A DNA stretch of 64,000 bases from Amoebophrya sp. A120 (taxonomy: Eukaryota; Protista; Dinoflagellata): the NCBI GenBank assembly GCA_905178155.1, contig CAJINV010000005.1, positions 42,254-106,253 on the forward strand, written 5' to 3'. The stretch's first letter is position 1. Each line of letters begins with the position of its first letter. The notes below the pieces were generated by a model. It saw nothing but the letters and a program-made list of their open reading frames with translations. It made no database searches and was not told the origin of the DNA. The translations under genes and the position numbers were made by a program. Below, piece by piece: positions 29,875 through 43,437 of the stretch.

Positions 29875-32335
29875 TTAAAAACTCACATTTTCCGTGGAGG
29901 AATCCAAGTCAGCCCCCGCACCAGCCGTCGGCAACCTTTCCGCCGAGTACTCTGCCAGGTAATCCCCTTCCGAGTGGTCGTCCACCCACGTTTTCGCGGG
30001 CTTCGGCGCCAAGTCCCCACTGAAAAACGACACGTGGGCCTTGTCCCGATACGTCAACACATTAGCATGCTTGTGCCTCGTCCATCGCATGAACAGCCCG
30101 TGACAGTGCTTCATCCACGTGGAGTAGTTCAACTTGCCGTTTATTCTCTCGCTCGAGGCAAGATCGTCGTTGTCGTCGTCGTGTGGTTGGTGTTTATTGT
30201 CTTCTTGCCTTTCACATTTATTTTCCGATCGCATTCTTTCCGCATTTTTGTACAAGTACTCGATGTAATCCGCTTGGAACCCGCACTCCGCTGAATCACT
30301 CCCGTCCATCCTGTCGAATTCTGCAGTGTCTTCGGCCAGCGCGGCCGTGACTTGCTCGGGTGTCGGCTTCATATTTCCGGCTGGAAAGGAAGTCCAGAGC
30401 GCAGTGAACCAGGCTGCTTGGGCGTCAAACATGGTGAAAGTAAACCTTTTGTTTTATTTTTCAGGGATCATCAATCTTGCAGCGGGATGGGATAGAATAC
30501 GAAGTCATTTCTCCGTAGGCGGGATAGGACAACACAGAGGAAGATTTTTGCATAGGAAAAATGGCATGATAGATCGGGCATTCGCAACACAGCATTAAAG
30601 ATCTAGTATACTTTGGATACCATTGATCCTGCATGCCCAAGTAGGCGATGTTGAGGTCCTGGGGTAGCAAAACTCCCTTGTACAGGTTCGGAATGTAGAC
30701 GTCATTGCTTTCGACCTGTAGTCGCAGGCTTTTCTCCATGAAGGGAAAGTAGTGCTTGTACCTGAGATTTGATGATTTCATACGGTTTCTGGTGTCTCGT
30801 TCGATTTTAATCGCTTCGAAACTTTCACAAATCGACACCAAGTAGATCAGCTGACTTTTTTAGTGGCAAATTGTAAATGTAAATTGCTTTTACCACAGTG
30901 AGTGTGAATCCATTCAACATAAGAACCAGCTGTACTTCTACCCTGTGCAGAGAATAATCGCATCCACAGTGCTCTCGTCTATTCCTTCTTCTTCCTTAGA
31001 TTCCGCTTTGTTGAACCAGATCTTCCCGTCCGTCCTCGCACACAGGTTCCCCCGCACCGTCACCTTATTCTTCGGCCACGGAGTCGTCAAAAATTGCTTG
31101 CACTTCCGCATGGCCAGCGTGATATGTTTTGCGTCGTACTTCAGCAACTGGGAGACCACGTCCTGCGCAGAGCAGCTGCTGCCAACGACTACCACGTGCT
31201 TGCCTGCGTACTGCCTCGCATTCCGGAAGTCGTGGCTGTGCGAGACTTCGATCAGGTGTCCTCGTGGGGCCGGCGGTGAATCTGAAACTGAATTAGCATT
31301 AAGTCCTCTGGCTGTGGTCCCGATTGTCAGTGCCAGTCCGGGAAGTTGTGGGACTGCGGGTGTGGAAAAGTGCCCCGTAGCAACGACGATGAAATCGTAC
31401 TCATCGGTGTGCCACAGTTTGCTACTAGTACAACTCGAAGATTTGTTTTCCAGACCAACGTCCTCGTGGTTCGCGTTTATTCCGGGTGGCGGTCCGTTTG
31501 CGGAGTCTTGGTGGTCAAAATCAGAGGCCGAGGTCGAAGGCGTCAAAGTTGAAGACGGTGAGGCCTTCATGACGTCCGCACTGCTTTCCGCTACGGTAGA
31601 GGAGGTTGTACAGCCGCGTGGGTCGGACGCGGACGAGGAGGAGGAGGTCATCGTCATCTCGACGCTGCTTGAAGAACAAACCGCTGCTGCTTCTGGTTCT
31701 ACAGAAGCTGTAGTTGTTCCTGTAGCTGATGACGCAGCAACGGCTTCTACACTGCTCAACACTCGATGAAGATCCTTTTCGCAATACGTGACTCGGTACT
31801 TCTTGCTACTCGTCGAGGAACGTGAAGCAGTACGACCGGATAAAGATGACGCTGATGCAGGAGCTATTGGCACAGCACTCTCTACAGAATAGACCTCGCA
31901 GTTGCAGGACACATATTTTTCCAAATATTTCTCGTGCCGCCCGCGGATGTAATCCAGCACGGGCTTCCGCGGGGGAAAAGAGGAGCAGTTGGATATGTTT
32001 GCTATTTTTTTCCCAGTTACTCTTACTGTGGTCTCAAAATGCTGTTTCCACGTATAGTCCGCGTACTCAATGCACTCCTTCGGCCCGTTGCTGTACAGGT
32101 TCTGGTACATGGACCCGTGGATCCCGACGTTTTTGTCTTTCTCGAAACAACTGCTCTCGTCCCTCCCGGTTCGGTCGTCGTACACCCACAGGCCGCCAAC
32201 TTCGGGCTGCTTTTCCAGACACTTGATTTTCCCGAAGTTTTTGGAGTCTGCGAGGTTCTTGACCGCGGCGAGCCCCGATGGTCCGGCGCCGATCACGCAG
32301 ACGGAGGGGAGCGGGGGAGGAGAGGAGTTTTCCAT
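29875..32335 (-). CDS. Flavin-containing monooxygenase, bacterial trimethylamine monooxygenase (Tmm)-like, ~701 aa, 3 exons
   Basis: Motifs GAGPSG, HGSMYQNLYSNGPKEC, ATGHFSTP, HSHDFRNA, GSSCSAQD, ILCTG|YKHYFPF, GMQDQW|FTFTMFDAQA. GT-AG introns 30762-30941 and 30446-30620 give an intact frame. Confidence 0.9.
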
Positions 32336-33058
32336 CTTGATAAGAGTCTCAGTTCCGGTGTGTGGAAAGAATAAGAAATCAAGGAACCGAGGACACGCGA
32401 TTATTTTCGGCAGTTCATCTTTTCGTTTTTGCAACTTTCGTCTTTTCGACTCGACGGTTTCTTTTTTCTAAAGCAATTTATGAAGAAAACCAACGATCAC
32501 GTTGGGACCAGGACGAGGACGTATTGGTCCTCTTGCACAAGGCACAGAAGCAAGAAAGACGCAAGAGCACGCACGGAACGCACCAAGCAGCCCGCCCCAG
32601 CACGCAACCTCAGCGTCCGCGGGTCAAGCATCTACTATCTAACAGGAGGCGTTTTGATGTAGAGGCAATCACTTTTACTTTTTTACACACGCCGCCGGTA
32701 CAATCAACAATGCCGCTCAATTCCACCCAAACATGAACTGCAAGAACTGTTGATCTTGATGCAAGTAATTAGCATAACGAAACTGTTTAGTTAAGAAAAG
32801 AAGTAGAAATCAAACAAGCAATTCAGAAACGGAAAAGAAAAAGAAACGTAGATCGAAACCAAATGACCATATTAGACCTTTGCTCTAGCAGTCCTTGCGC
32901 TTTTTACCTCCAAAATTTTCTCAAATGCAAAGAGGTAAACGGAGGCAAAGTAAAGCAAAGTACACATAGCAAGGAGGCAAAGCAAAGCAGAGTACAGATA
33001 GCAAGAACGCCGGCAGTGAAAACAATAAAGTGAATACAGTAGCATCTCAACCCCTCCG

Positions 33059-36000
33059 TCACGCGGCCACCATGTAGGGTTGAACCGGCGACCCGGCATA
33101 CTTCTGCCCCCCTTCCAGTTTTTCGGTCTTCATCACGACGGAGCCCGGCATCAGTTCCAAGTTGTCGCCCAATTCTGCGCCGCCCATGATGGTGCAGTTC
33201 GGATGGATCACGCAGTTGTCTCCCAACCTCGTCTATCAAATGCAAAAGTGTCTGGGTCTGGAAGAGTGCATGCTTGTCATGCTTGTCTGGCATGACTCTT
33301 AGATCTGTCATGCACGTTACCCAAGAGCCCCATTTTGCTGTCATGCAGAAGCGCAGTCTGCCATGCAGAATAGGCAACACCTAGAAGCTCAAAAGCTTGT
33401 CATGCTGAGCCGGCACTTGTGGCCTCTTCATGATACGCCACCCAGCGTCACAAGTTTCCAGACCCAGACATTTTTACAATCCATATCGTCGGTTGCGCCC
33501 AGAAAATCCGGTCCTCGAACGTGTGAATTTGCCAGTGCGGCATTATGCATTGCAAATATGTCTGGGTCTGGAATAGAATGAAGCCTGTCATGCGAAAGCT
33601 GGATCACGAGAAAGTCTCTGTTGCATAAACGCCAATAGTTACCCAATTCTCGCTAGGCAAAAGGAGAATAATTTCTCATGCGGAAGACGCATGAAGAAGG
33701 TCTCACAAAATCTGTGATGCTTCTGTCTGCATTGCAGACCAAGAGTGTGGTCCGCGAGATGCATGACAAATCTTGCAACTTTCCAGACCCAGACATATTT
33801 GCAATCCATAGGCATGGCTAGGACGCAATTGTCCCCCACATCCACGCCGTCGAAGTCCATGGTCCCGAACCCGTTCACGAAAAGCGTGTTCTTCCCAATT
33901 TTGCTCCCCAGCATCCGGTAGACCACGTTCTGCAGCAGCGTCCCCTCAAACGGCGCCATGAACGGGTCCAGCCACACCTGCGCCACGTGCCAACAGAAGA
34001 AGTGACGCTGCACATACAAGTCCCACAACGGAAACGACCCGATCGGCGTGCGGCCCAACATAACTGCCTTCAACACGAAATAGAGGAAAGGGAGGAGTAA
34101 AGTCAAAGTGAAAGTCGAGACAGCTAACAGCAAGAAGAGCAACGCGAGCTGCGGCGGGATAGCGGCAATCGTAAAAATCGCGCCGCTTTTCGACGTTGCA
34201 GGAGCTTGGTTACTGACCATGGCCAGAACCGAACTGTCGTAGCTGACGTGGTACGCCAAGTCAAAAGCGATCAACGCCAAAGCGATCGGCACCACGTGCG
34301 TCCAGGTGGCCAGGCCGTCGTAAATCAGGAACCGGTGGAAGTACTCGAAGAAGGTCGGCTCGAATAGGACCTTCTCGTCCTTGAAATCAACGTGGTTATT
34401 GTTACTAGTAGTAGTCCCAACAACTTCCGGCTGCTGCAGATTCCTGGCGCCAGAAGCATGATCCCCATTCGGAATGAGTTTATTCATACCACCAGAAGTT
34501 CTCATGCTAGGATCTGCTGTATCATCTTCGGCCGACTTCGCATATTGCCCCTGCTGCCGCTCCGACCCGAGCATTATCGGCGGAATGCCAAAGAAGGTCT
34601 TCGGCACGTCCAATCGGGCGTTCATGCGCCGCACGTTTTGGTTCCCGTAAGCCACTATGGACTGCAAATATGTCTGGGTCTGGGAGGATGCGGACTTGTC
34701 ATGCTAAGTCTGGATCGTCAAAACAATTTCGTGTTGCATGACTACCAAAAGCTGTCGAGTTTTGAACACGTTTAGAGGTAGTTTGTCATGCAGGATAGGC
34801 ATGATAGGGACTTCGCAGAACCTGTCATGCTAGGTCCTGCATTGCAAACCTCATGGGGCATGGAAAATATGCATGAGAAGTTTGCATTCTCCCAGACCCA
34901 GACATATTTGCATTTGATAGCCACCGTGCGCACCCCGATAAGCGTGTTCGTCGCATGGTTTCCAGGAAGGATGATGGCGTGATTGCCGACGAAGAAGTTT
35001 TGCGGGAACCGGCACCGTTGGAGCGTTAGGTACAACCTCGTTTCCAGCTTCCCATTCTTGCCAATCACCTGCACTTGCTCGTAGTCCATCTGATGCGAGA
35101 ATCCCCCGCCCGCCCAGAAGCTGTTCGCCCCGACTAACGTGACGTCGGGCATCACGTCGTGCATGTTCGCGAGTTCGTTGCACCCACACCCGCCGTCGAA
35201 AATGACCCCGGCAAGCTCGAGAAAATACGGCTTCAGCGCTTTGGAACCACAAAACTTCTGGATGCGGTTTAGAAAGAAGATCTTTTTGCGGATCAACCCC
35301 GCGACGATCGTGCTGTTCTCGTACGAGCCCGGCGGGATTCTCGGCAAAAATCGGAGGAAGAGACAGTAGGTCAAGTTCTCGACCCAACTCGCGCAAGCGA
35401 AGATCGTGTTCAGATAGCACATGAAGAGGACCACTTGCCCAAACAGCGTGAAAAAAGAAGCAGCTCCTACTGTACTAGTCGACGCAGTTGCAGCGGCCGA
35501 TGATGTCGTTCCGTAGAGGAACGCCAACGTTCTCAGCATGCAGCCGGTCGCCTCCGTGTGCATGGCTATTACCAGCGTTGTCGCGAAGTGGTAGGCGAGG
35601 GAAAAGACGATCAAGTAGTAGAATTGCAGTAAGAGCACGTAGACAATTCCGATGCCCGTTTCCACCACGAAGCAGTACCCGATATCCCAGCTGTCCTTCG
35701 TGATTTGCGCCCCCAGCACCTTCTTCGGCATCGCCCGCTCCCGGCCGGCGGACACGGCGGGGACACCCTCCCACACCTCGTTCTGCTTCACGATCTGTAG
35801 TTCTGCTCCGTCGTTGTTATGGAATGCAAATATGTCTGGGTCTGGAAGATTCCCAGGCTTGTCATGCATGTTTTGTATGACCCATGACCCCTGTGATGCA
35901 TGACCTAGCACCGCAGATTTTTAGAGGGCTTACTTATGCCTAATCCGCATGATAAATGCCCTCTCCGTGTAGCAGAAACTGGGCTCCTCTTGCTAGTGAC

Positions 36001-39000
36001 GCAATACAAATTTTTTTAGGATCCAAGAACAGCATGACAAGTTGCAACCTGCCAGACCCAGACGTTTTTGCGATTGATAGTTGTTATCGGAGGACGACGT
36101 CGTGCCGGAGTCGTTATCCCGCTCGTCGCTGCTGGTCGTGTGAATACTGAAGCTCGGGGTTTTAGAGTTCGAAGTTGTGCTAGTCAACAGCATCGCTTTA
36201 TTCCGGTCGAGTTTCCGCTGCTCTTCGTGCAGGTTGAGAACCTTCAGCTGCTCGTCCAACTGGTGTTCTTGCTGCAACGCCGCCAGCGGCTCCAAAACTG
36301 CCCCGTTTTCCACGATGCTCCCCGGGCCGACGAAGCAGCTCCCGCCGAGCTTCGCCCCGTGGCCGATGGAGACATCGGCCAAAGTAATATTCTCCAGGTC
36401 AAAAGACACCGTACAAACTATGACGATGAAAAATGCCCCCACCCCGGAATTTGCAGAAGTTTGTCATGCAAAGTTTCCAAATCAATGAAAGGTTTTTGTC
36501 TTGCATAAAAGGATTGCGAGTATTTCTCATACAGAATCTGGGTGCGCAAGGTGCCTTGTGCATAACAGATCCCGCTGCTGTTGGGCTACTTCGCAACACA
36601 AATTTGACCTATTCATTGATTCAGCATGGAAAATTTGTGATGCTGGTATATGCAAGACGGGGAATGTTTCTGTTGGAACTGTTTACAATACAAATGCTGC
36701 CAAGCTGGGGGTGGGGACATTTTTCATTTTAATACAGACCACCGCGTCGCGGATGATCACGTTGTCGCCGATTTTCACCCGCTTCAGCTCCCCGTTGAAT
36801 TTCCACTTATCAAATGCAAAAATGTCTGGGTCTGGAAGAATGCAACTTGTGATGCTGCATTTGGATTCCAAAAAGATCTGTATTGCATGAGTAGCAAAGG
36901 GAGTGCAGTTTTTGCTACGCTGAGAAGGCATTTGTCACGCGGAATAGGCATCAAGAAGCCCTCAAAAAATCTGTATTGCTAGGGTATGCATCACAGACAT
37001 CATGGCTCAAGCTCATGCAAAACGTGCATGACAAGTGTCACGATCTTCCAGACCCAGACATTTATTTTTACAGTTGATACCACTGGCCGCCAAACCAACA
37101 ATTCTCCCCGACGTCCGCGCCGTACAGCTTCAGCCCCTCGCCGACCCAGTCCGCGTGGACAACGACCGCGCAGAGGCGGAGAAACCCGACCCAGATGGCT
37201 TCGAGTCGCCCCCGCGTCCACAACAGGTATATCAACTGCAAACATGTCTGGGTCTGGAGGAGTCATGCTGCTTTTGCATAACACAGAAGGTCTGGCATGG
37301 AAGCTCTAGCATCACAGACTTCGAGAAGCTTCCGCAATGCCGAATCCGCATGACAAATCCCACATTCTGGTAACAGAAAGTGGGCAGCTTGTGCTGCCTC
37401 TGCACGACAGATTTTTATGTGTTGTGAAATGCGCATCACAAGTTTGCTTTCTTCCAGACCCAGACATCACTTTTGCAATGCATAAGGTAGTGGCGGAAAC
37501 TGAATTTTTCAAACCGTGCCACGTTCTGCGGACCGCTATCCTGTGCAAAAGTATCGTACTCGTATTGCAATCATGCAAAACAAATCTTTGTCTTAAGATA
37601 AATCAGCATTACAAATTTTATCTGTCACGCTGAGGAAGTTTGTGATGCATTTATACGAGTACGATACTTTTGCAATGCATAACCGCGGCAGGGCGGCAAC
37701 AAGCACTTCTCGAGCAAGCGGAGCACATGGTGGCAGGCCACGGACTCGAGAACGAACAGGATCGCGACGAGAAGCATCCCGGAGGAGAAGATCAAAACGT
37801 ACTTCATCGCTTCGATTGGGTCCGTAGCCATTGCAGTGATGGACGCGACTAAATCTTCTGAAGTTCTTGCAGAAGCTCCTGATGACGCAGAGGAAGAAGA
37901 TTCTTCAAACCCGTAGGTCGCCAAGACGAGCAGAATCCCGAACACCACCTGCCCCCCGCCCGCGACGAACAGGGTGGCGGCTTGGAGAATCGTGAACACG
38001 GAGGGGCCCATGCTGCTCGAAATGTCGAAGCCCTGCGGGAAGATGTGCGTCGCAATGTAGTTGTCGGAAGAGTAGTAGACCGCCTTTGCGTTGTCCAATT
38101 CCGACTGCGCTCGTGTCCGCACCGACGTGATGCTCTCCGCGGAGCTGCTGCCGGCGGTGGTCGTGCTGACCAGCGTTTCCGTTTCCCCGACCGAAGCCAT
38201 CTTTTGCTTCAAAAACGAGCTGCTTTTGTTGCTGTCCGCAGAATCCGATTTCTTGATCGAGTTCTGTCGGTCCTTCGCGATTTTCTTCGCCAAGGCCGCG
38301 GGCGTGCTGGCAACCTCGGTCAACAGGTCACGCACGGCGACGCCGTGGAAGCCGTGGCCCCGAAGCTTGGTGGCGAGACCGGCGATAGTGAGAGAGTCAC
38401 CGCCGAGATCTTTCACAAAATGGCTGCGCCACTGTACGGTTCTGTTTTAATGATGATGTGGAATTCAATTTTGCAAATATTTCTTTGGTCTTTGCTTGTT
38501 TCGATAGTTATGTTACGTGGAACATCAGCATGTTTCACAATTGAACTCCTAGGCTAAAGCTCACTCTTACGGTATTATTTCGCACCACGGCACAAACTTT
38601 CCACTTCTACCTTGGCTTCAAAGTTTCCTGGCAGAGTAGCAAAACTTCGCTGTCCAATTCCGTGACTGGTCCCTCCGACAGCACATCCGTAAGAACGCTC
38701 TTCAAATTACCAGTCCCGAAACCTCCGCCCTCCTCGTCATCCAGCGGTTGCGCCAGCAAGCTTTCCGCGGACAGGTCCGGCAGCGCCTTTCGGTTCAGCT
38801 TCCCGGAGCTTGGCAGCCGCGGCACGTCCTCGAGCAAACCGAAGCACCCCGGAATCGCCATTTTTATCCTGAGTAAAAACGTACCCACCCCAGAGTTGTA
38901 ATGCAGATTTGCAATGACAAAGACATTTGTGATGCGCATCCCCATGAGAACCATTTCCAATCGTGTTTTGGAATTTGTGATGCTGTGAACAGGATCAGCA

Positions 39001-42000
39001 GGTCGATTTGTGATGCGGCTTTCCTTGCTAACTTGCACTACCTTACGGACTGAAACTTGTCATGCGTAACTCCCAAAACTCCTAGGTTTGTGTTGCAAAA
39101 TCCCCATCTTTACTCTGGTGTGGGTACGTTTTTACTCAGGATAATTTTCGGAACGTACTCCGCGATTTTCGCCTGCAGAATTTTCGTCACCTCGACGTTC
39201 GCCAACCGGAGATTTCTCTCCGACCAGGTGACCGTCGACACCGTCGTGGGGTTCATCAACACCGGCTTGGCGCTCGTTTCCACGCTGATCGCGGTCAGAT
39301 TTTCCATCCGCTCGAACAACTGCGGCACCTGGAGGAAGCCAACCAGTCCGTTGCCCTGCTTCTCCACGGTTGCGGACACGATCTCGATATCGGATAAATA
39401 TTTCTTCACGACGTTGTCTTTATCTTTACCTTCTTCATCCTCGACAATTTCTTGCACCGTCTTCATCAGCCCCGCCTCCACGGATTGGAGTTCGATCCGG
39501 TGTTATTACAATGAAAAATGCCCCCAGCCCAGAACTTGGCAGCATTTGCATTGCAAACCTTTCCAATGGAAACATTCCCCGTCTTGCATATCCCAGTATC
39601 ACAAATCTTCCATGCTGAATAGCCCAAACTTGTGTTGCAAAGGAGCCCAACAGCAGGCGGGCGTGTTATGCAAAAGATACCTTGCACCCCTAGATTCTGC
39701 GTCAGAAAGGCTCGTAGTCCTTTCATGCAAGACAAAAAGCTTTCATTTGGAAACTTTGCATGAAAAACTTTTGCAAATTCCAGGGAGGGAGCATTTTTCA
39801 TTTTGATAGGTGCCCCCGGATCTTCACCTGGTGGTCGATCCGGCCGAGAAAGTGCACTTCCTTCGTCTTCGCGTCGATCTTGCACAGATCCCCGGTGCGA
39901 TACAACCGCCCGTACACCGAATGCTCGATAAATTTTTCCGCGGTCAAGTCTGGGCGGTTCAAGTACCCCTTCGCGAGTTGCAGGCCGCCGACGCACAATT
40001 CGCCCGTCTCCCCGTGGGGGAGCGGTTGTTGGAAGTCGACGCCGAGGATCACGGCGGTCGTGCCCGCGTGCGGGGTGCCGATGCTGCAGCCCCCGTGCTC
40101 CGCGTTGTAGTAAACGTCCCCGGAGAGCACGCAAATCGAGGCCTCGGTCGGCCCGTAGCCGTTGACGAGTCGTCGTCCACCGGCGGTCCAGGGTTGGACA
40201 ATGTCCTCCCGCAAGGCCTCGCCCCCGCAGTACACGTGGCGTAATAGTGGCAGCGGTAGGTCTCGCATCGGGTAGGCGGAAATGGTAGGGAGGAGAGAGG
40301 GCACGGGAAAAATGCTAGTAATTTGTTCTCGCTTAATCACCCCGACCATGTCCGGCCCGGAACGGATCTGCGCGTCTAGCAGGCAAACCACGAGACAGCC
40401 AGATAGCCACGGAATGTACATCTCGTCGATGCTAGAATCGTAGGAGAGCGAGGAGGAAGTGCTGCCGATGTCGTAGTCGTTCAGTAAGGAAAAAGTATCC
40501 CCGGCGTTCAAGAGGGACTGCACGTACCCTTTGTGGGTGGACAAAACTGCCTTCGGCTTCCCCGTCGATCCCGAGGTGTAGTTTCCTGAGTAAAAACGCT
40601 CCACCCCAGAGTCAAGATGGGAAGGCTGCAACACAAATCTCCAAGTTTTGTCAGTTGTGCATCACAAATTTCCATCTGCAGTGTAGTGCTGCTTAGCAAG
40701 GCCAGCCGCATGAGAAACCCAGCTTCTCATCCTGTTTACAGCATTACAAAGTCCAAAACACAATTGGAAATGCCTCTCACGCTCATGGAGATGCGCATTG
40801 CAAATCTTCCTGTCATTGCAAATCTGCATGACAAATCTGGGGTAGGGACGTTTTTACTCAGGATATGTAGATCACCGTCGCCAGCCGCTCCTTCGGGTCG
40901 TCCAACCACTCGGGCTGCGTCAGGTCGTGGCTGTGCTCGGTGTTGTGCAACAGAAATTCCTCATCTTCGTAGTACGCGAGCCTCTGCACGATGTCCAGCA
41001 CCGGGCAAACGTAAAAAGCAGTACTAGCTGGGGCAGCGGTCACGACACCATTGCTCATCATTCCGGCTCCCCCGGCACCACCCTTCCGGGGGAACAGCCT
41101 CGCTTGCCATTCCGCCCTCTGCTCCCCGCACAGCACGATCCTCGGCTGACAATCCTGCAGCATTGTTTGCAAGATTTCGTCCGGAAGATTGCCGTCGAGG
41201 AAGAGAACCGCCGCCCCGGACTTCAAGACCCCGAGTTGGCAGGCGAAGATGTGGTAGGAATCGCGGGGGAGCAACACGGCGACAATTTGGTCCTTGCCCG
41301 TGACGAACTCTTCCTGTAACAGAACGCGCTTGATCAGCTCCGCTTTTGCGTTCATCTGCTGAAAAGTCAGAGTCGTCTCCCAAGCCGAGTCCGCGACGCG
41401 GAAACAGGGCGAGTCCGGCCATTTCTTCGCGGACTTCTCGAACAGTTCGTGGAGCCACTTGGTGTGTTTCTGGTGCGCCAAGGCGGTGATCAGAAAATCC
41501 GGCGACCAGGTTTCGGTCAGCGACGCGTTGTCCAGGTCCTTCTGGTCGTGCCTGGTTCGGCCAATCCGCACGTACTCACGCCACAGGAAAAAGGCAACGG
41601 AGGTGAAGACAATCAGGAAGACTATCAGCCCGATGGCAACCCCAGAAGTGAAAGACCCGTCAAACGCCTCCTGGTGCAAGTCGCGCAGGACACTTAGCGT
41701 GGAGGCGAGGGCGCTGGCGGGGAGGGCGGAGGTTAGTTTCACGCTTTTCGGGTCAAAATCGGTGATCTTCGAGGACCTACGCGCCTGACTTCCATGATCT
41801 TCCAGGAAAAAGAGCGGTTTGAAGATCTTAGTGTCGAAAAAACTTGTTTTGGAGCCGCTCAAGGTCTTCTTGTCATCAGTGGTCTCGTGGCGAGTACGCG
41901 AACTGAACGTAGTGGTCGTGGAAACTTCCTTCACTACGGGAGTTGTCCCTTTCGCTCTCTTGATGTTCTTTCGGATCAAGTTCTTACCCACACTTCTTTG

Positions 42001-42123
42001 CAGCTTCGCCCCCTTCGCCGCAAAAGACGAAGCCCGCAGGCTAGCACGGTTCCGCGCGGTAACGCCAGTAAACGCACCGGCGGGCGCGGCGGCCAGCAAA
42101 CATGTGAGTGCGGTCCCCAGCAT
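33059..42123 (-). CDS. Single-module membrane-bound NRPS-like enzyme of the Pls (epsilon-poly-L-lysine synthetase) family, ~1979 aa, 13 exons
   Basis: After removing 11 TIR elements (each plus one TSD) and GT-AG intron 38442-38610, 5940 nt remain in frame. Adenylation motifs YTSGSTGKPK, NGYGPTE, YRTGD, QVKIRGHRIEL, SGKLNR; T domain LGGDSL; three TM plus hexapeptide-like terminal domains (WEGVPA, TFFGIPP, QIHTFEDR, VVMKTE...YAGSP); TGA at 33059-33061. Confidence 0.9.
33234..33485. mobile_element. Introner-like TIR element, family A
   Basis: tatcaaatgcaaaagtgtctgggtctgg...ccagacccagacatttttacaatccata; perfect TSD tcgtc; removal gives AQPTRLGDN. Confidence 0.95.
33544..33810. mobile_element. 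Introner-like TIR element, family A
   Basis: tatgcattgcaaatatgtctgggtctgg...ccagacccagacatatttgcaatccata; perfect TSD ggcat; removal gives VLAMPHWQIHTFEDR. Confidence 0.95.
34656..34919. mobile_element. Introner-like TIR element, family A
   Basis: tatggactgcaaatatgtctgggtctgg...ccagacccagacatatttgcatttgata; perfect TSD gccac; removal gives VRTVAYGN. Confidence 0.95.
35818..36079. mobile_element. Introner-like TIR element, family A
   Basis: Family A TIRs; perfect TSD gttgt; removal gives SSDNNDGAEL. Interior is an inverted, diverged copy of 36808-37079. Confidence 0.95.
36419..36734. mobile_element. Introner-like TIR element, family C
   Basis: tatgacgatgaaaaatgcccccacccc...ggggtggggacatttttcattttaata; TSD caaac/cagac; removal gives DAVVCTVSFD. 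Inverted homologue of 39504-39808. Confidence 0.92.
36808..37079. mobile_element. Introner-like TIR element, family A
   Basis: Family A TIRs; perfect TSD ccact; removal gives ENCWFGGQWKFNGE. Confidence 0.95.
37230..37484. mobile_element. Introner-like TIR element, family A
   Basis: Family A TIRs; perfect TSD aggta; removal gives FRHYLLWTRG. Confidence 0.95.
37537..37681. mobile_element. Introner-like TIR element, family D (145 bp, the shortest)
   Basis: tatcctgtgcaaaagtatcgtactcgtat...atacgagtacgatacttttgcaatgcata; perfect TSD accgc; removal gives PPCRGPQNV. Confidence 0.93.
38865..39143. mobile_element. Introner-like TIR element, family B
   Basis: tatcctgagtaaaaacgtaccca at both ends, inverted; perfect TSD atttt; removal gives EYVPKMAIPG. 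Confidence 0.95.
39504..39808. mobile_element. Introner-like TIR element, family C
   Basis: tattacaatgaaaaatgc...gcatttttcattttgata; TSD ggtgt/ggtgc; removal restores QVKIRGHRIEL. Confidence 0.93.
40582..40865. mobile_element. Introner-like TIR element, family B
   Basis: tttcctgagtaaaaacg...cgtttttactcaggata (left end TTT rather than TAT); perfect TSD tgtag; removal restores VIYTSGSTGKPK. Inverted homologue of 38865-39143. Confidence 0.95.
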
Positions 42124-42817
42124 GTTGCCGGTACCAAGGTGGGAATGGCGAGAAGGTCCGCAAGAGAAGGGCTAGGTGTGAAAAAGATGCACACGTGGGA
42201 GCAGGTGGCCCGATACTAGCTCAGGCATCTTTTGTGTTTGAGCTTTGACGTCTTGTTTGCACTCATTCTCGATGCCGTCACCATGCTCGGCTTCAGGTTT
42301 GCATTTGCAATTCTTGGTGTTGCAGCTCCCTCGAGCGTAGGTGTACGTTTGCTTGTCATTACAAAATCTGACGCAGACTCAATCTCAACATAATTCGCTC
42401 TCTTACGGTTGCAGCCGCACCGCTAAGATCAGGCCCTTGCTCTCCACTCAGCCTGCTCCTTCTCAGCGCAACTCTTGTGTCCTCTAACCGCACAGAAACA
42501 AACGCAAAAGAAGACTCTCTCGGCTGGTGGCACAGAAGTGTCGCGCAAGTAGGTACCCGTCCCCGCCAAGCAGCTGTGCACGAAATCGTCTACTGACGAG
42601 ACGCCGAACACGCAACTTCGCGAATCGCGGGCCCGCATCGATCAGAGCCATCGCATCTGGTAGTTGAAGCATCAAATAATCGAACATGGAAAGAGCACAC
42701 CAGCACTACTTGAAGGAAGAGGAGCGCATAAAGTTTTAGACTTGATTTTCATTATCTGTGCGCATCCCGCCATCGCGCAACAGCACAGCATCGATTCCAA
42801 AAAGCCACCCTCTACTT

Positions 42818-43437
<620 letters not shown>

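What the first reader, a model, noticed from the sequence alone, without database searches (positions are those of the whole stretch)
33059..42123. Hidden Pls-like poly(amino acid) synthetase in a protist
Seen: fragments in the ORF track assemble into A - T - three (TM + hexapeptide-like) domains with no standard condensation or thioesterase domain. Known: this is the architecture of Streptomyces epsilon-poly-L-lysine synthetase, which makes cationic isopeptide homopolymers. Inference: probably acquired from bacteria and producing a polyamide such as poly-Lys, poly-Dab or poly-Dap; the substrate cannot be read from sequence by eye.
Basis: partly seen in the sequence, partly recalled or inferred. 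Interest (0 to 1): 0.82.

Follow-up and report, generated by a model that had tools for sequence, protein, structure and literature searches.

The report
Divergent polylysine-synthetase-like enzyme in Amoebophrya
A parasitic dinoflagellate (Amoebophrya sp. A120) carries an intact, intron-riddled gene for a membrane-bound enzyme of the bacterial polylysine/polyornithine-synthetase type, but its substrate pocket does not match any known polymer, so it probably makes an uncharacterised cationic amino-acid polymer.

Summary
Minus strand 42123..33059 is one 13-exon gene, identical to the public model CAD7948930.1 ("unnamed protein product", Amoebophrya sp. A120, 1979 aa), so it is unnamed rather than hidden.

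Architecture: N-terminal membrane anchor, adenylation domain, carrier domain with its serine, then three (two-helix + left-handed beta-helix) units. There is no condensation or thioesterase domain. This is the Pls/PosA layout, but TIGR02353 scores 126.7 bits against a 423.1 cut-off, so it is a divergent relative.

Eleven of 12 introns are Amoebophrya introner elements, and the gene lies on a 9.2 Mb scaffold, so it is not contamination.

Both protein halves place it with two environmental sequences and a Yihiella yeosuensis (dinoflagellate) transcript. This group is sister to a large uncharacterised bacterial clade with pocket code DSETYGGVTK, whose one assayed member weakly activates L-arginine.

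An ancient bacterial origin is plausible but unproven. Eukaryotic (including alveolate) homologues were already reported in 2023.

No transcript or biochemical data were available here.

The parts
33059..42123 (-). Whole coding region (13 exons, 12 introns) of the Pls/PosA-like synthetase. It equals public protein CAD7948930.1 / GSA120T00018641001 (P0001, 1979 aa).
40867..42123 (-). Exon 1 (aa 1-419). N-terminal extension with a possible signal peptide (judged by eye only), hydrophobic anchor aa 162-180, a juxtamembrane motif shared with P0158, and the start of the adenylation domain.
39810..40580 (-). Exon 2 (aa 419-675). Adenylation core from YTSGSTGKPK to QVKIRGH. Holds nine of the ten pocket-code residues: D466 S467 D470 S513 Y535 G537 G559 I567 C568.
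   Evidence: (TIGR01733 214 bits)
39146..39502 (-). Exon 3 (aa 675-793). C-terminal adenylation subdomain, about 40 residues longer than usual. The extra stretch is also present in P0158.
38610..38864 (-). Exon 4 (aa 793-877). A10 motif SSGKLNRKALP (code Lys814) and the first helix of the carrier domain.
37682..38443 (-). Exon 5 (aa 877-1130). Carrier-domain motif DLGGDSL (Ser893), a serine-rich linker, and transmembrane helices 1 and 2.
36080..37531 (-). Exons 6-9 (37487-37531, 37080-37229, 36734-36805, 36080-36418; aa 1131-1328), which encode tandem domain C1 and the following linker. W1148, G1181, A1182 and G1185 are kept. The usually conserved R1146, D1201 and G1224 are replaced.
   Evidence: (Hexapep)
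34919..35818 (-). Exon 10 (aa 1327-1626). Transmembrane helices 3 and 4 plus the whole tandem domain C2. The AlphaFold model (pLDDT 74.7) shows a helical hairpin followed by a beta-helix-like region, whose best PDB matches are hexapeptide-repeat O-acetyltransferases.
33810..34655 (-). Exon 11 (aa 1625-1906). Linker, transmembrane helices 5 and 6, and the first part of tandem domain C3 (TIGR02353 positions 518-625).
33487..33543 (-). Exon 12, a 57-nt micro-exon (aa 1905-1923, HWQIHTFEDRIFWAQP). It carries the most conserved C3 motif, Q-x-H-x-x-E-D (His conserved in 99% of family rows), and lies between two family-A introners.
33059..33232 (-). Exon 13 (aa 1923-1979) plus the stop codon. Hexapeptide repeats at the end of C3 (TIGR02353 positions 647-695).
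33233..33486 (.). Intron 12, a family-A introner (TIR about TATGSAWTGCAAATATGTCTGGGTCTGGAA). Other family-A copies form introns 11 (33544-33809), 10 (34656-34918), 9 (35819-36079), 7 (36806-37079) and 6 (37230-37486). Boundaries are ambiguous by the short direct repeats.
40581..40866 (.). Intron 1, a family-B introner (TIR TTATCCTGAGTAAAAACGT...). The second copy is intron 3 (38865-39145).
39503..39809 (.). Intron 2, a family-C introner (TATTAMAATGAAAAATG...). The second copy is intron 8 (36419-36733).
37532..37681 (.). Intron 5, a short element with its own inverted ends (TATGCATTGCAAAAGTATCGTACTCGTAT ... ATACGAGTACGATACTTTTGCACAGGATA). The direct repeat GCGGT lies at both junctions.
   Evidence: read directly
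38444..38609 (.). Intron 4, the only intron without terminal inverted repeats. It reads as a canonical GT...AG intron if the boundary is shifted by one base.

Best explanation
This is a nuclear gene of Amoebophrya sp. A120 for a single-module, membrane-embedded NRPS-like polymerase of the Pls/PosA (cationic homo-poly-amino-acid synthetase) superfamily.

Proposed mechanism, inferred by homology. The cytosolic adenylation domain activates an alpha-amino acid with a cationic side chain. The amino acid is loaded onto the phosphopantetheine arm at Ser893 of the carrier domain. The pseudo-trimeric beta-helix domain (C1-C3), held in the membrane by three helix pairs, then transfers it repeatedly onto a side-chain amine of a free growing chain. 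The released product would be an isopeptide polycation.

The pocket code DSDSYGGICK keeps Asp at position 1, which binds the alpha-amine. It has small residues at positions 2, 6 and 7, and an acidic Asp where all known members have Glu. The preferred substrate is therefore most likely a larger or longer cationic amino acid (arginine-like or a modified lysine), not Lys, Orn, Dab or Dap.

The gene belongs to a dinoflagellate lineage with an added N-terminal membrane anchor. That lineage is probably derived from an old bacterial transfer and was later colonised by 11 introner elements.
For: Shown:
- Exact 13-exon model with an intact frame.
- Domain hits.
- Three hydrophobic helix pairs plus an N-terminal helix.
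- A search of 1.84 billion proteins with the C3 exon returned 201 hits; the three best full-length hits scanned all carry TIGR02353 at 356-649 bits.
- Columns conserved in at least 80% of 99 relatives are kept at 60/71 (A), 8/11 (T, including Ser893) and 41/51 (C-terminal, including Q1909-H1911-E1914-D1915).
- The exon-10 model matches hexapeptide-repeat acyltransferases.
- Both halves of the protein give the same tree position.
- The code was derived from alignments without gaps at the code positions.
- A phosphopantetheinyl transferase gene exists in the genome.
- This is the only strong amino-acid adenylation domain in the genome.
- The nearest relative, P0158, shares the N-terminal anchor and A-subdomain insertion.

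From the literature: roles of code positions 1-3 and the weak L-Arg activity of the DSECYGGVTK enzyme (PMC10522769).
Against: - TIGR02353 (126.7 vs 423.1), TIGR01733 (283.9 vs 317.4) and PP-binding (17.9 vs 20.8 bits) are all below the curated cut-offs.
- Several near-invariant residues are replaced: C1 R1146L, D1201K and G1224E; C2 D1563G; code position 3 Glu to Asp. In PosA the E221A mutant is inactive.
- No transcript, protein or product data were available here.
- No orthologue from the other sequenced Amoebophrya strains appeared in the searches.
- The substrate inference rests on one weakly active in-vitro homologue.
Confidence: 0.6

Rival explanations
1. Same enzyme type, but it makes one of the known polymers (epsilon-poly-L-lysine, or poly-Orn/Dab/Dap).
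For: The closest relatives, P0158 and P0160, have the near-Lys code DAESTGSIVK. Asp and Glu are both acidic. Pocket codes are imperfect predictors.
Against: In P0001, positions 2, 3, 5, 7, 8 and 9 all differ from the Lys code. Among the 130 family rows aligned, no other has Asp at position 3. Its pattern S2/Y5/G6/G7 is that of the DSE-YGG clade, whose tested member did not prefer any of the four diamino acids (PMC10522769).
Confidence: 0.12
2. A relative of the family that no longer polymerises. The adenylation-carrier pair loads one amino acid, and the beta-helix acyltransferase domain passes it once to another acceptor (a lipid, a surface glycan or a small amine).
For: C1 has lost several near-invariant residues (R1146, D1201, G1224) in P0001, P0158 and P0160. 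The HMM score is sub-threshold. The fold resembles simple acyltransferases. The added N-terminal anchor and long linkers differ from bacterial members.
Against: C2 and C3 keep most conserved residues, including the Q-x-H-x-x-E-D motif. The complete 3 x (TM pair + domain) layout is retained. No member of the family is known to act this way.
Confidence: 0.18
3. A decaying, non-functional remnant of an old transfer.
For: It is very divergent (25-38% identity to bacterial relatives). Key residues are replaced. No orthologue was seen from other Amoebophrya strains. It lies 75-84 kb from a scaffold end.
Against: The 1979-codon frame is intact across 13 exons, with every introner removed in frame. 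109 of 133 conserved columns are kept. The catalytic-looking micro-exon is preserved. Relatives occur as ORF-filling 5.4 and 6.6 kb contigs that look like transcripts (inference).
Confidence: 0.09
4. Bacterial contamination or an assembly artefact.
For: The family is mostly bacterial.
Against: Twelve introns, 11 of them Amoebophrya-type introner elements that also occur elsewhere in the window. The gene lies on a 9.24 Mb scaffold. Its flanking genes are an FMO-like gene with low-complexity inserts and a HIT-domain gene. Identity to any bacterial protein is at most 38%.
Confidence: 0.01

Closest known systems
Uncharacterised bacterial 'DSE-YGG' clade of Pls/PosA-like synthetases (for example Bdellovibrionales OFZ39577.1, Novosphingobium fuchskuhlense AQZ52_11345 = P0169)
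   Same: Sister group in both the adenylation-domain and the C-terminal-domain trees. Same architecture. The pocket pattern D-S-acidic-x-Y-G-G is shared. The C3 motif AHTFEDR is shared.
   Different: Bacterial proteins are about 1320 aa and lack the N-terminal anchor and long linkers. They have Glu, not Asp, at code position 3 and VT, not IC, at positions 8-9. 32 of 80 bacterial loci have a SET-domain gene directly upstream; none was found with that query in Amoebophrya. Identity is only 25-38%.
Epsilon-poly-L-lysine synthetase Pls (Streptomyces albulus BAG68864.1; A-domain structure 7WEW)
   Same: A - T - six TM helices in three pairs - C1/C2/C3 tandem domains, with no C or TE domain. The A-domain exon matches 7WEW at E 6e-23.
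   Different: Code DAESIGTVVK versus DSDSYGGICK. Pls falls in the other major branch of the tree. TIGR02353 score is far lower. The Amoebophrya protein has an extra N-terminal membrane anchor and is 1979 aa versus about 1319 aa (the Pls length is from my own knowledge).
Delta-poly-L-ornithine synthetase PosA (Acinetobacter baumannii; 8G95-8G98)
   Same: Same family and layout. The A-domain exon matches 8G95 at E 2.8e-34. The predicted pseudo-trimeric beta-helix domain agrees with the published AlphaFold model (PMC10522769).
   Different: Code DMEHNGTVSK. PosA Glu221 is essential, and here that position is Asp.
Eukaryotic Pls-like proteins already reported (Epichloe epsilon-PL synthetase, PMC7179176; Vitrella brassicaformis CEM14083.1, Nematostella and Planoprotostelium in PMC10522769; Chromera velia Cvel_1691 = P0036)
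   Same: Show that this family occurs in eukaryotes, including alveolates.
   Different: Those carry Lys-type codes and fall in the Lys-like part of the tree. The Amoebophrya/Yihiella clade is separate in the best tree, although one alveolate clade is not rejected (p-AU 0.165).

Membership tests
Pls/PosA cationic homo-poly-amino-acid synthetases | NRPS-type amino-acid adenylation domain with core motifs and Asp235/Lys517 equivalents | tested here: met
   PF00501 194 bits (above cut-off). TIGR01733 283.9 bits (just under 317.4). D466 and K814 are present. 60/71 conserved columns are kept.
Pls/PosA cationic homo-poly-amino-acid synthetases | Carrier (thiolation) domain with the phosphopantetheine serine | tested here: met
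   DLGGDSL with Ser893 falls in a column that is 100% Ser. The Pfam PP-binding hit is only 17.9 bits against a 20.8 cut-off, so the motif is met but the HMM is sub-threshold.
Pls/PosA cationic homo-poly-amino-acid synthetases | C-terminal domain matching TIGR02353 at the curated cut-off (423.1 bits) | tested here: not met
   126.7 bits, E 9.5e-37, two stretches, best 1796-1972 to model positions 518-695. The bacterial sister-clade member P0002 also falls below the cut-off (356.5 bits).
Pls/PosA cationic homo-poly-amino-acid synthetases | Six transmembrane helices in three pairs, each followed by a soluble tandem domain (C1, C2, C3) | tested here: met
   Kyte-Doolittle segments at 1028/1092, 1382/1442 and 1739/1794. 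C2 aligns with bacterial C2 and models as a helical hairpin plus beta-helix. This was a hydropathy scan only, not a dedicated TM predictor.
Pls/PosA cationic homo-poly-amino-acid synthetases | No conventional condensation or thioesterase domain | tested here: met
   No PF00668 or PF00975 hit at E <= 0.001 on the full model.
Pls/PosA cationic homo-poly-amino-acid synthetases | Acidic Glu at pocket position 3 that binds the side-chain amine (conserved in all characterised members) | tested here: not met
   Asp470 instead of Glu. This is unique among the 130 aligned family rows. The charge is kept, but the side chain is one carbon shorter.
Pls/PosA cationic homo-poly-amino-acid synthetases | Produces an isopeptide-linked homopolymer | not testable with these tools
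   Needs expression and LC-MS.
Amoebophrya introner elements (non-canonical introns with inverted and direct repeats, Farhat et al. 2021) | Introns of about 240 nt with terminal inverted repeats and short direct repeats at exon junctions, in repeated families | tested here: met
   11 of 12 introns, 150-315 nt long, fall in four families with 26-30 nt inverted ends. Compare PMC7789003.

The most novel reading that the evidence does not exclude
Dinoflagellates (Syndiniales plus at least one core dinoflagellate) possess their own lineage of membrane-anchored polycation synthetases. The Amoebophrya enzyme would make a previously unknown cationic isopeptide polymer, from an arginine-like or modified-lysine monomer selected by a unique Asp-containing pocket. 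The parasite would export this polymer, for example to permeabilise or enter its dinoflagellate host or to act against competing microbes.
Probability: 0.15. Interest if true: 0.75.

Novelty: new variant of a known kind. Interest (0 to 1): 0.45.

Why it matters
Pls-type enzymes make the few known natural polycationic isopeptides (epsilon-polylysine, poly-ornithine, poly-Dab, poly-Dap), which are antimicrobial and cell-penetrating. This locus extends the family in three ways:
- To parasitic dinoflagellates.
- To a dinoflagellate clade with an extra membrane anchor.
- To a substrate pocket not seen in 130 relatives.

That points to a possible new polymer, and it links to a large, chemically unexplored bacterial clade. 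It is also a clear example of a probably bacteria-derived gene that was later split into 13 exons by transposon-like introners, one of which isolates the catalytic-looking motif in a 57-nt exon.

The interest is limited because eukaryotic and alveolate homologues were already reported, and because function and expression remain untested.

Tried and rejected
- PDB sequence search with the C2 and C3 exons: no hit at E <= 1. No solved terminal domain turned up.
- tblastn of the C3 exon against plasmids: no match.
- Word search with the C3 exon alone: nothing, because of the length window.
- A second TIGR02353 'hit' on contig 1 is an unrelated 1775-aa protein with a dynactin-p25-like beta-helix and a kinesin fragment, not a paralogue.
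- My first guess that the carrier-domain intron was larger was wrong. The alignment with P0158 supports the public model.
- Gene identifiers were not found in the supplements of the two Amoebophrya papers, so there is no expression evidence.
- The bacterial SET-domain neighbour has no detectable counterpart in the Amoebophrya genome with that query.
- The AU test did not reject one alveolate clade, so I do not claim independent acquisitions.
Full-length analyses used the public protein returned by the search, and all other searches were exon by exon, by reference.
Full report
**What is there**

The window has eukaryotic features: about 52% GC and many short open frames on the minus strand between 42.1 and 33.0 kb.

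Scanning the open pieces by reference gave these hits:
- AMP-binding / TIGR01733 on 40861-42171 and 39801-40661.
- A weak PP-binding hit on 37628-38446, which contains DLGGDSL.
- Hexapep on 35996-36463 and 33062-33232.
- TIGR02353 (Pls/PosA terminal domain) on 33642-34703 and 33062-33232.

A six-frame search of the whole assembly (115.5 Mb, 401 contigs) found TIGR02353 signal only at this locus. One other hit was an unrelated beta-helix/kinesin ORF.

**Identity of the gene and organism**

I ran a profile-free HMMER search of 1.84 billion representatives with the C3 exon (window:33813-34655:-). I used it only after the plasmid search, the word search and the PDB searches were blank. It returned a 1979-aa protein that is 100% identical over the exon.

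That protein is CAD7948930.1, 'unnamed protein product [Amoebophrya sp. A120]' (GSA120T00018641001; EukProt RCC4398), on a 9,243,444-bp scaffold.

The assembly size and the roughly 240-nt repeated non-canonical introns agree with the A120 genome paper (PMC7789003).

tblastn and exact codon extension map the protein onto 13 exons from 42123 to 33062 with no mismatch. The gene is unnamed, not hidden.

Every full-length analysis used this public protein, and all other searches were exon by exon.

**Introns**

Eleven of the 12 introns are MITE-like introner elements in four families:
- Family A: six copies.
- Family B: two copies.
- Family C: two copies.
- Family D: one copy.

They have 26-30 nt inverted ends and short direct repeats at the junctions. 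Intron 4 is the exception and reads as an ordinary GT-AG intron.

A 57-nt micro-exon (33487-33543) lies between two family-A elements. It encodes HWQIHTFEDRIFWAQP.

These introns, together with the FMO-like and HIT-domain neighbours, exclude bacterial contamination.

**Architecture**

On the public model:

| Family | Score (bits) | Curated cut-off |
|---|---|---|
| PF00501 | 194 | passed |
| TIGR01733 | 283.9 | 317.4 |
| TIGR02353 | 126.7 (E 9.5e-37) | 423.1 |
| Hexapep | 49.5 | 27 (passed) |

No condensation or thioesterase family was hit.

Hydropathy gives one N-terminal helix (162-180) and three helix pairs at 1028/1092, 1382/1442 and 1739/1794.

I aligned exon 10 (TM3-TM4-C2) with the same segment of 35 bacterial relatives. 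The AlphaFold model had pLDDT 74.7 and showed a long helical hairpin followed by a beta-rich domain. Its best PDB matches are hexapeptide-repeat maltose, galactoside and serine acetyltransferases: top E 8e-4, probability 1.00, but only modest TM-scores. This agrees with the published model of PosA's terminal domain (PMC10522769).

**Conservation**

I looked at alignment columns where at least 80% of 99 other family members share a residue. The Amoebophrya protein keeps:
- 60 of 71 in the adenylation region.
- 8 of 11 in the carrier domain, including Ser893.
- 41 of 51 in the terminal domain, including Q1909, H1911, E1914 and D1915 of the micro-exon.

It has replaced R1146, D1201 and G1224 in C1, and D1563 in C2.

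The genome encodes a phosphopantetheinyl transferase. This locus is by far the genome's strongest amino-acid adenylation domain: 212 bits, against at most 67 bits elsewhere.

**Relatives and phylogeny**

Identity to bacterial family members is 25-38%.

A word search with residues 1000-1979 of the public protein found a much closer relative, P0158 (1765 aa, on a 5.4-kb contig; 275 bits). It also found P0160 (1986 aa, 6.6-kb contig), Telonema subtile transcripts and a fungal protein. P0158 shares the N-terminal anchor with its juxtamembrane motif, the A-subdomain insertion and the unusual carrier-domain N-terminus.

Maximum-likelihood trees (IQ-TREE quick search, LG+C20, SH-aLRT support) were built separately for the two halves:

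| Grouping | C-terminal region (102 rows) | Adenylation region (81 rows) |
|---|---|---|
| P0001 + P0158 + P0160 | 100 | 86 |
| Plus P0033, a Yihiella yeosuensis transcript (a dinoflagellate) | 98 | 99 |
| Sister to a large bacterial clade | 99 | 97 |

Rows left out:
- Sequences shorter than 1100 aa.
- Redundant 90%-cluster members.
- In the A tree, all but 20 of the bacterial sister clade.

Limits of these trees:
- Sampling is biased toward relatives of the query.
- The trees are unrooted.
- Several branches are long.

Chromera velia's homologue (P0036) falls elsewhere. However, an AU test does not reject one alveolate clade (p = 0.165).

The bacterial sister clade is widespread. At least 276 loci were found in species-representative genomes of Sphingomonadales, Acidobacteriota, Planctomycetota, Verrucomicrobiota, Actinomycetota, Gemmatimonadota and Myxococcota.

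An old bacterium-to-dinoflagellate transfer is therefore the simplest reading, but the direction and the number of events are not shown.

**Substrate pocket**

I used ungapped alignments to LgrA and to the family and the published positions.

| Protein or group | Pocket code | Note |
|---|---|---|
| Amoebophrya P0001 | DSDSYGGICK | No other aligned row has Asp at position 3 |
| Bacterial sister clade (58 of 130 rows) | DSETYGGVTK | Uncharacterised |
| Bdellovibrionales enzyme (published) | DSECYGGVTK | Preferred none of the four diamino acids; weak L-Arg activation |
| P0158 / P0160 | DAESTGSIVK | Near the Lys code |
| Yihiella P0033 | DVRSYAGPMK | |
| Published Lys | DAESIGTVVK | |
| Published Orn | DMEHNGTVSK | |
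| Published Dab | DFECLSAVTK | |
| Published Dap | DFEYVGTVTK | |
| Published beta-Lys | DGESVSVVNK | |

Published codes and the Bdellovibrionales assay come from PMC10522769. Position 4 in my column mapping may be offset by one residue from the published tables.

The pocket keeps the alpha-amine Asp and an acidic residue for a cationic side chain, but it is lined with smaller residues. I infer a larger or longer cationic monomer. This is inference only.

**Prior knowledge**

Patel et al. 2023 (PMC10522769) already reported family members in fungi, Amoebozoa, Metazoa and 'Alveota' (Vitrella brassicaformis). Their lists do not include Amoebophrya. Epichloe makes epsilon-polylysine with a fungal homologue (PMC7179176). 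I found no paper that links this family to dinoflagellates or Syndiniales.

**Limits**

- There is no transcript or biochemical evidence.
- The signal peptide is judged by eye only.
- The TM helices come from a hydropathy scan.
- The trees are quick searches.

**Verdict**

This is a divergent, probably functional Pls/PosA-type synthetase of a dinoflagellate-specific lineage with an unprecedented pocket. It is a new variant of a known kind and of moderate interest.

Noticed in passing
L007-L086 (bacterial loci), about 100-550 nt upstream of the synthetase start, e.g. L029:7469-8017, L021:2726-3286, L050:7447-7890: In 32 of 80 bacterial loci of the DSE-YGG sister clade, from at least five phyla, a SET-domain protein of about 140-190 aa lies directly upstream on the same strand. 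SET domains have the lysine-methyltransferase fold. This hints that the monomer or the polymer is N-methylated. I found no literature on this pairing in the searches I ran.
   Followed up: partly
P0046, P0069 (bacterial, about 1700 aa): Some bacterial sister-clade synthetases carry a C-terminal fusion to an HGSNAT_cat / DUF418 / Acyl_transf_3 membrane acyltransferase domain. This suggests acylation of the product.
   Followed up: no
window 30941-32434 (-): Directly downstream, on the same strand, lies a flavin-containing monooxygenase-like gene: trimethylamine-monooxygenase model 193 bits in three stretches, and a borderline Lys/Orn N-monooxygenase hit. It has long Ser/Thr/Ala-rich inserts. 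A functional link to the synthetase was not tested.
   Followed up: partly
window 42821-43138 (-): A HIT-domain (histidine triad) exon lies just upstream of the synthetase gene (PF01230, E 3e-10).
   Followed up: no
window 33487-33543: The most conserved motif of the terminal domain (Q-x-H-x-x-E-D) is isolated in a 57-nt micro-exon between two family-A introners. Correct excision of both elements is therefore needed for any activity.
   Followed up: partly
G000:C5, gene at about 75.3-84.4 kb of a 9.24 Mb scaffold: The gene lies within about 85 kb of a scaffold end, possibly a subtelomeric position. I did not check this for telomere repeats.
   Followed up: no
L004:3341-8668 (-) = G000:C1 about 2.915-2.921 Mb: An intron-free 1775-aa ORF combines a dynactin-p25-like left-handed beta-helix near the N-terminus with a microtubule-binding/kinesin-motor fragment at the C-terminus. 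It is unrelated to the finding.
   Followed up: partly
P0047, P0065, P0075, P0093, P0103, P0125, P0138, P0148, P0184 (Nemania sp.); P0183/P0186 (Telonema subtile): A fungal-type clade of the family, and the Telonema protein, lack the alpha-amine-binding Asp at pocket position 1 (codes such as VGITCASTPK and VAPSVTHVKK). They probably activate something other than an alpha-amino acid.
   Followed up: no
L006 = G000:C1:11436575-11439859: The genome's one detected 4'-phosphopantetheinyl transferase (AASDHPPT_N + ACPS domains). It is the likely activator of the carrier domain.
   Followed up: partly
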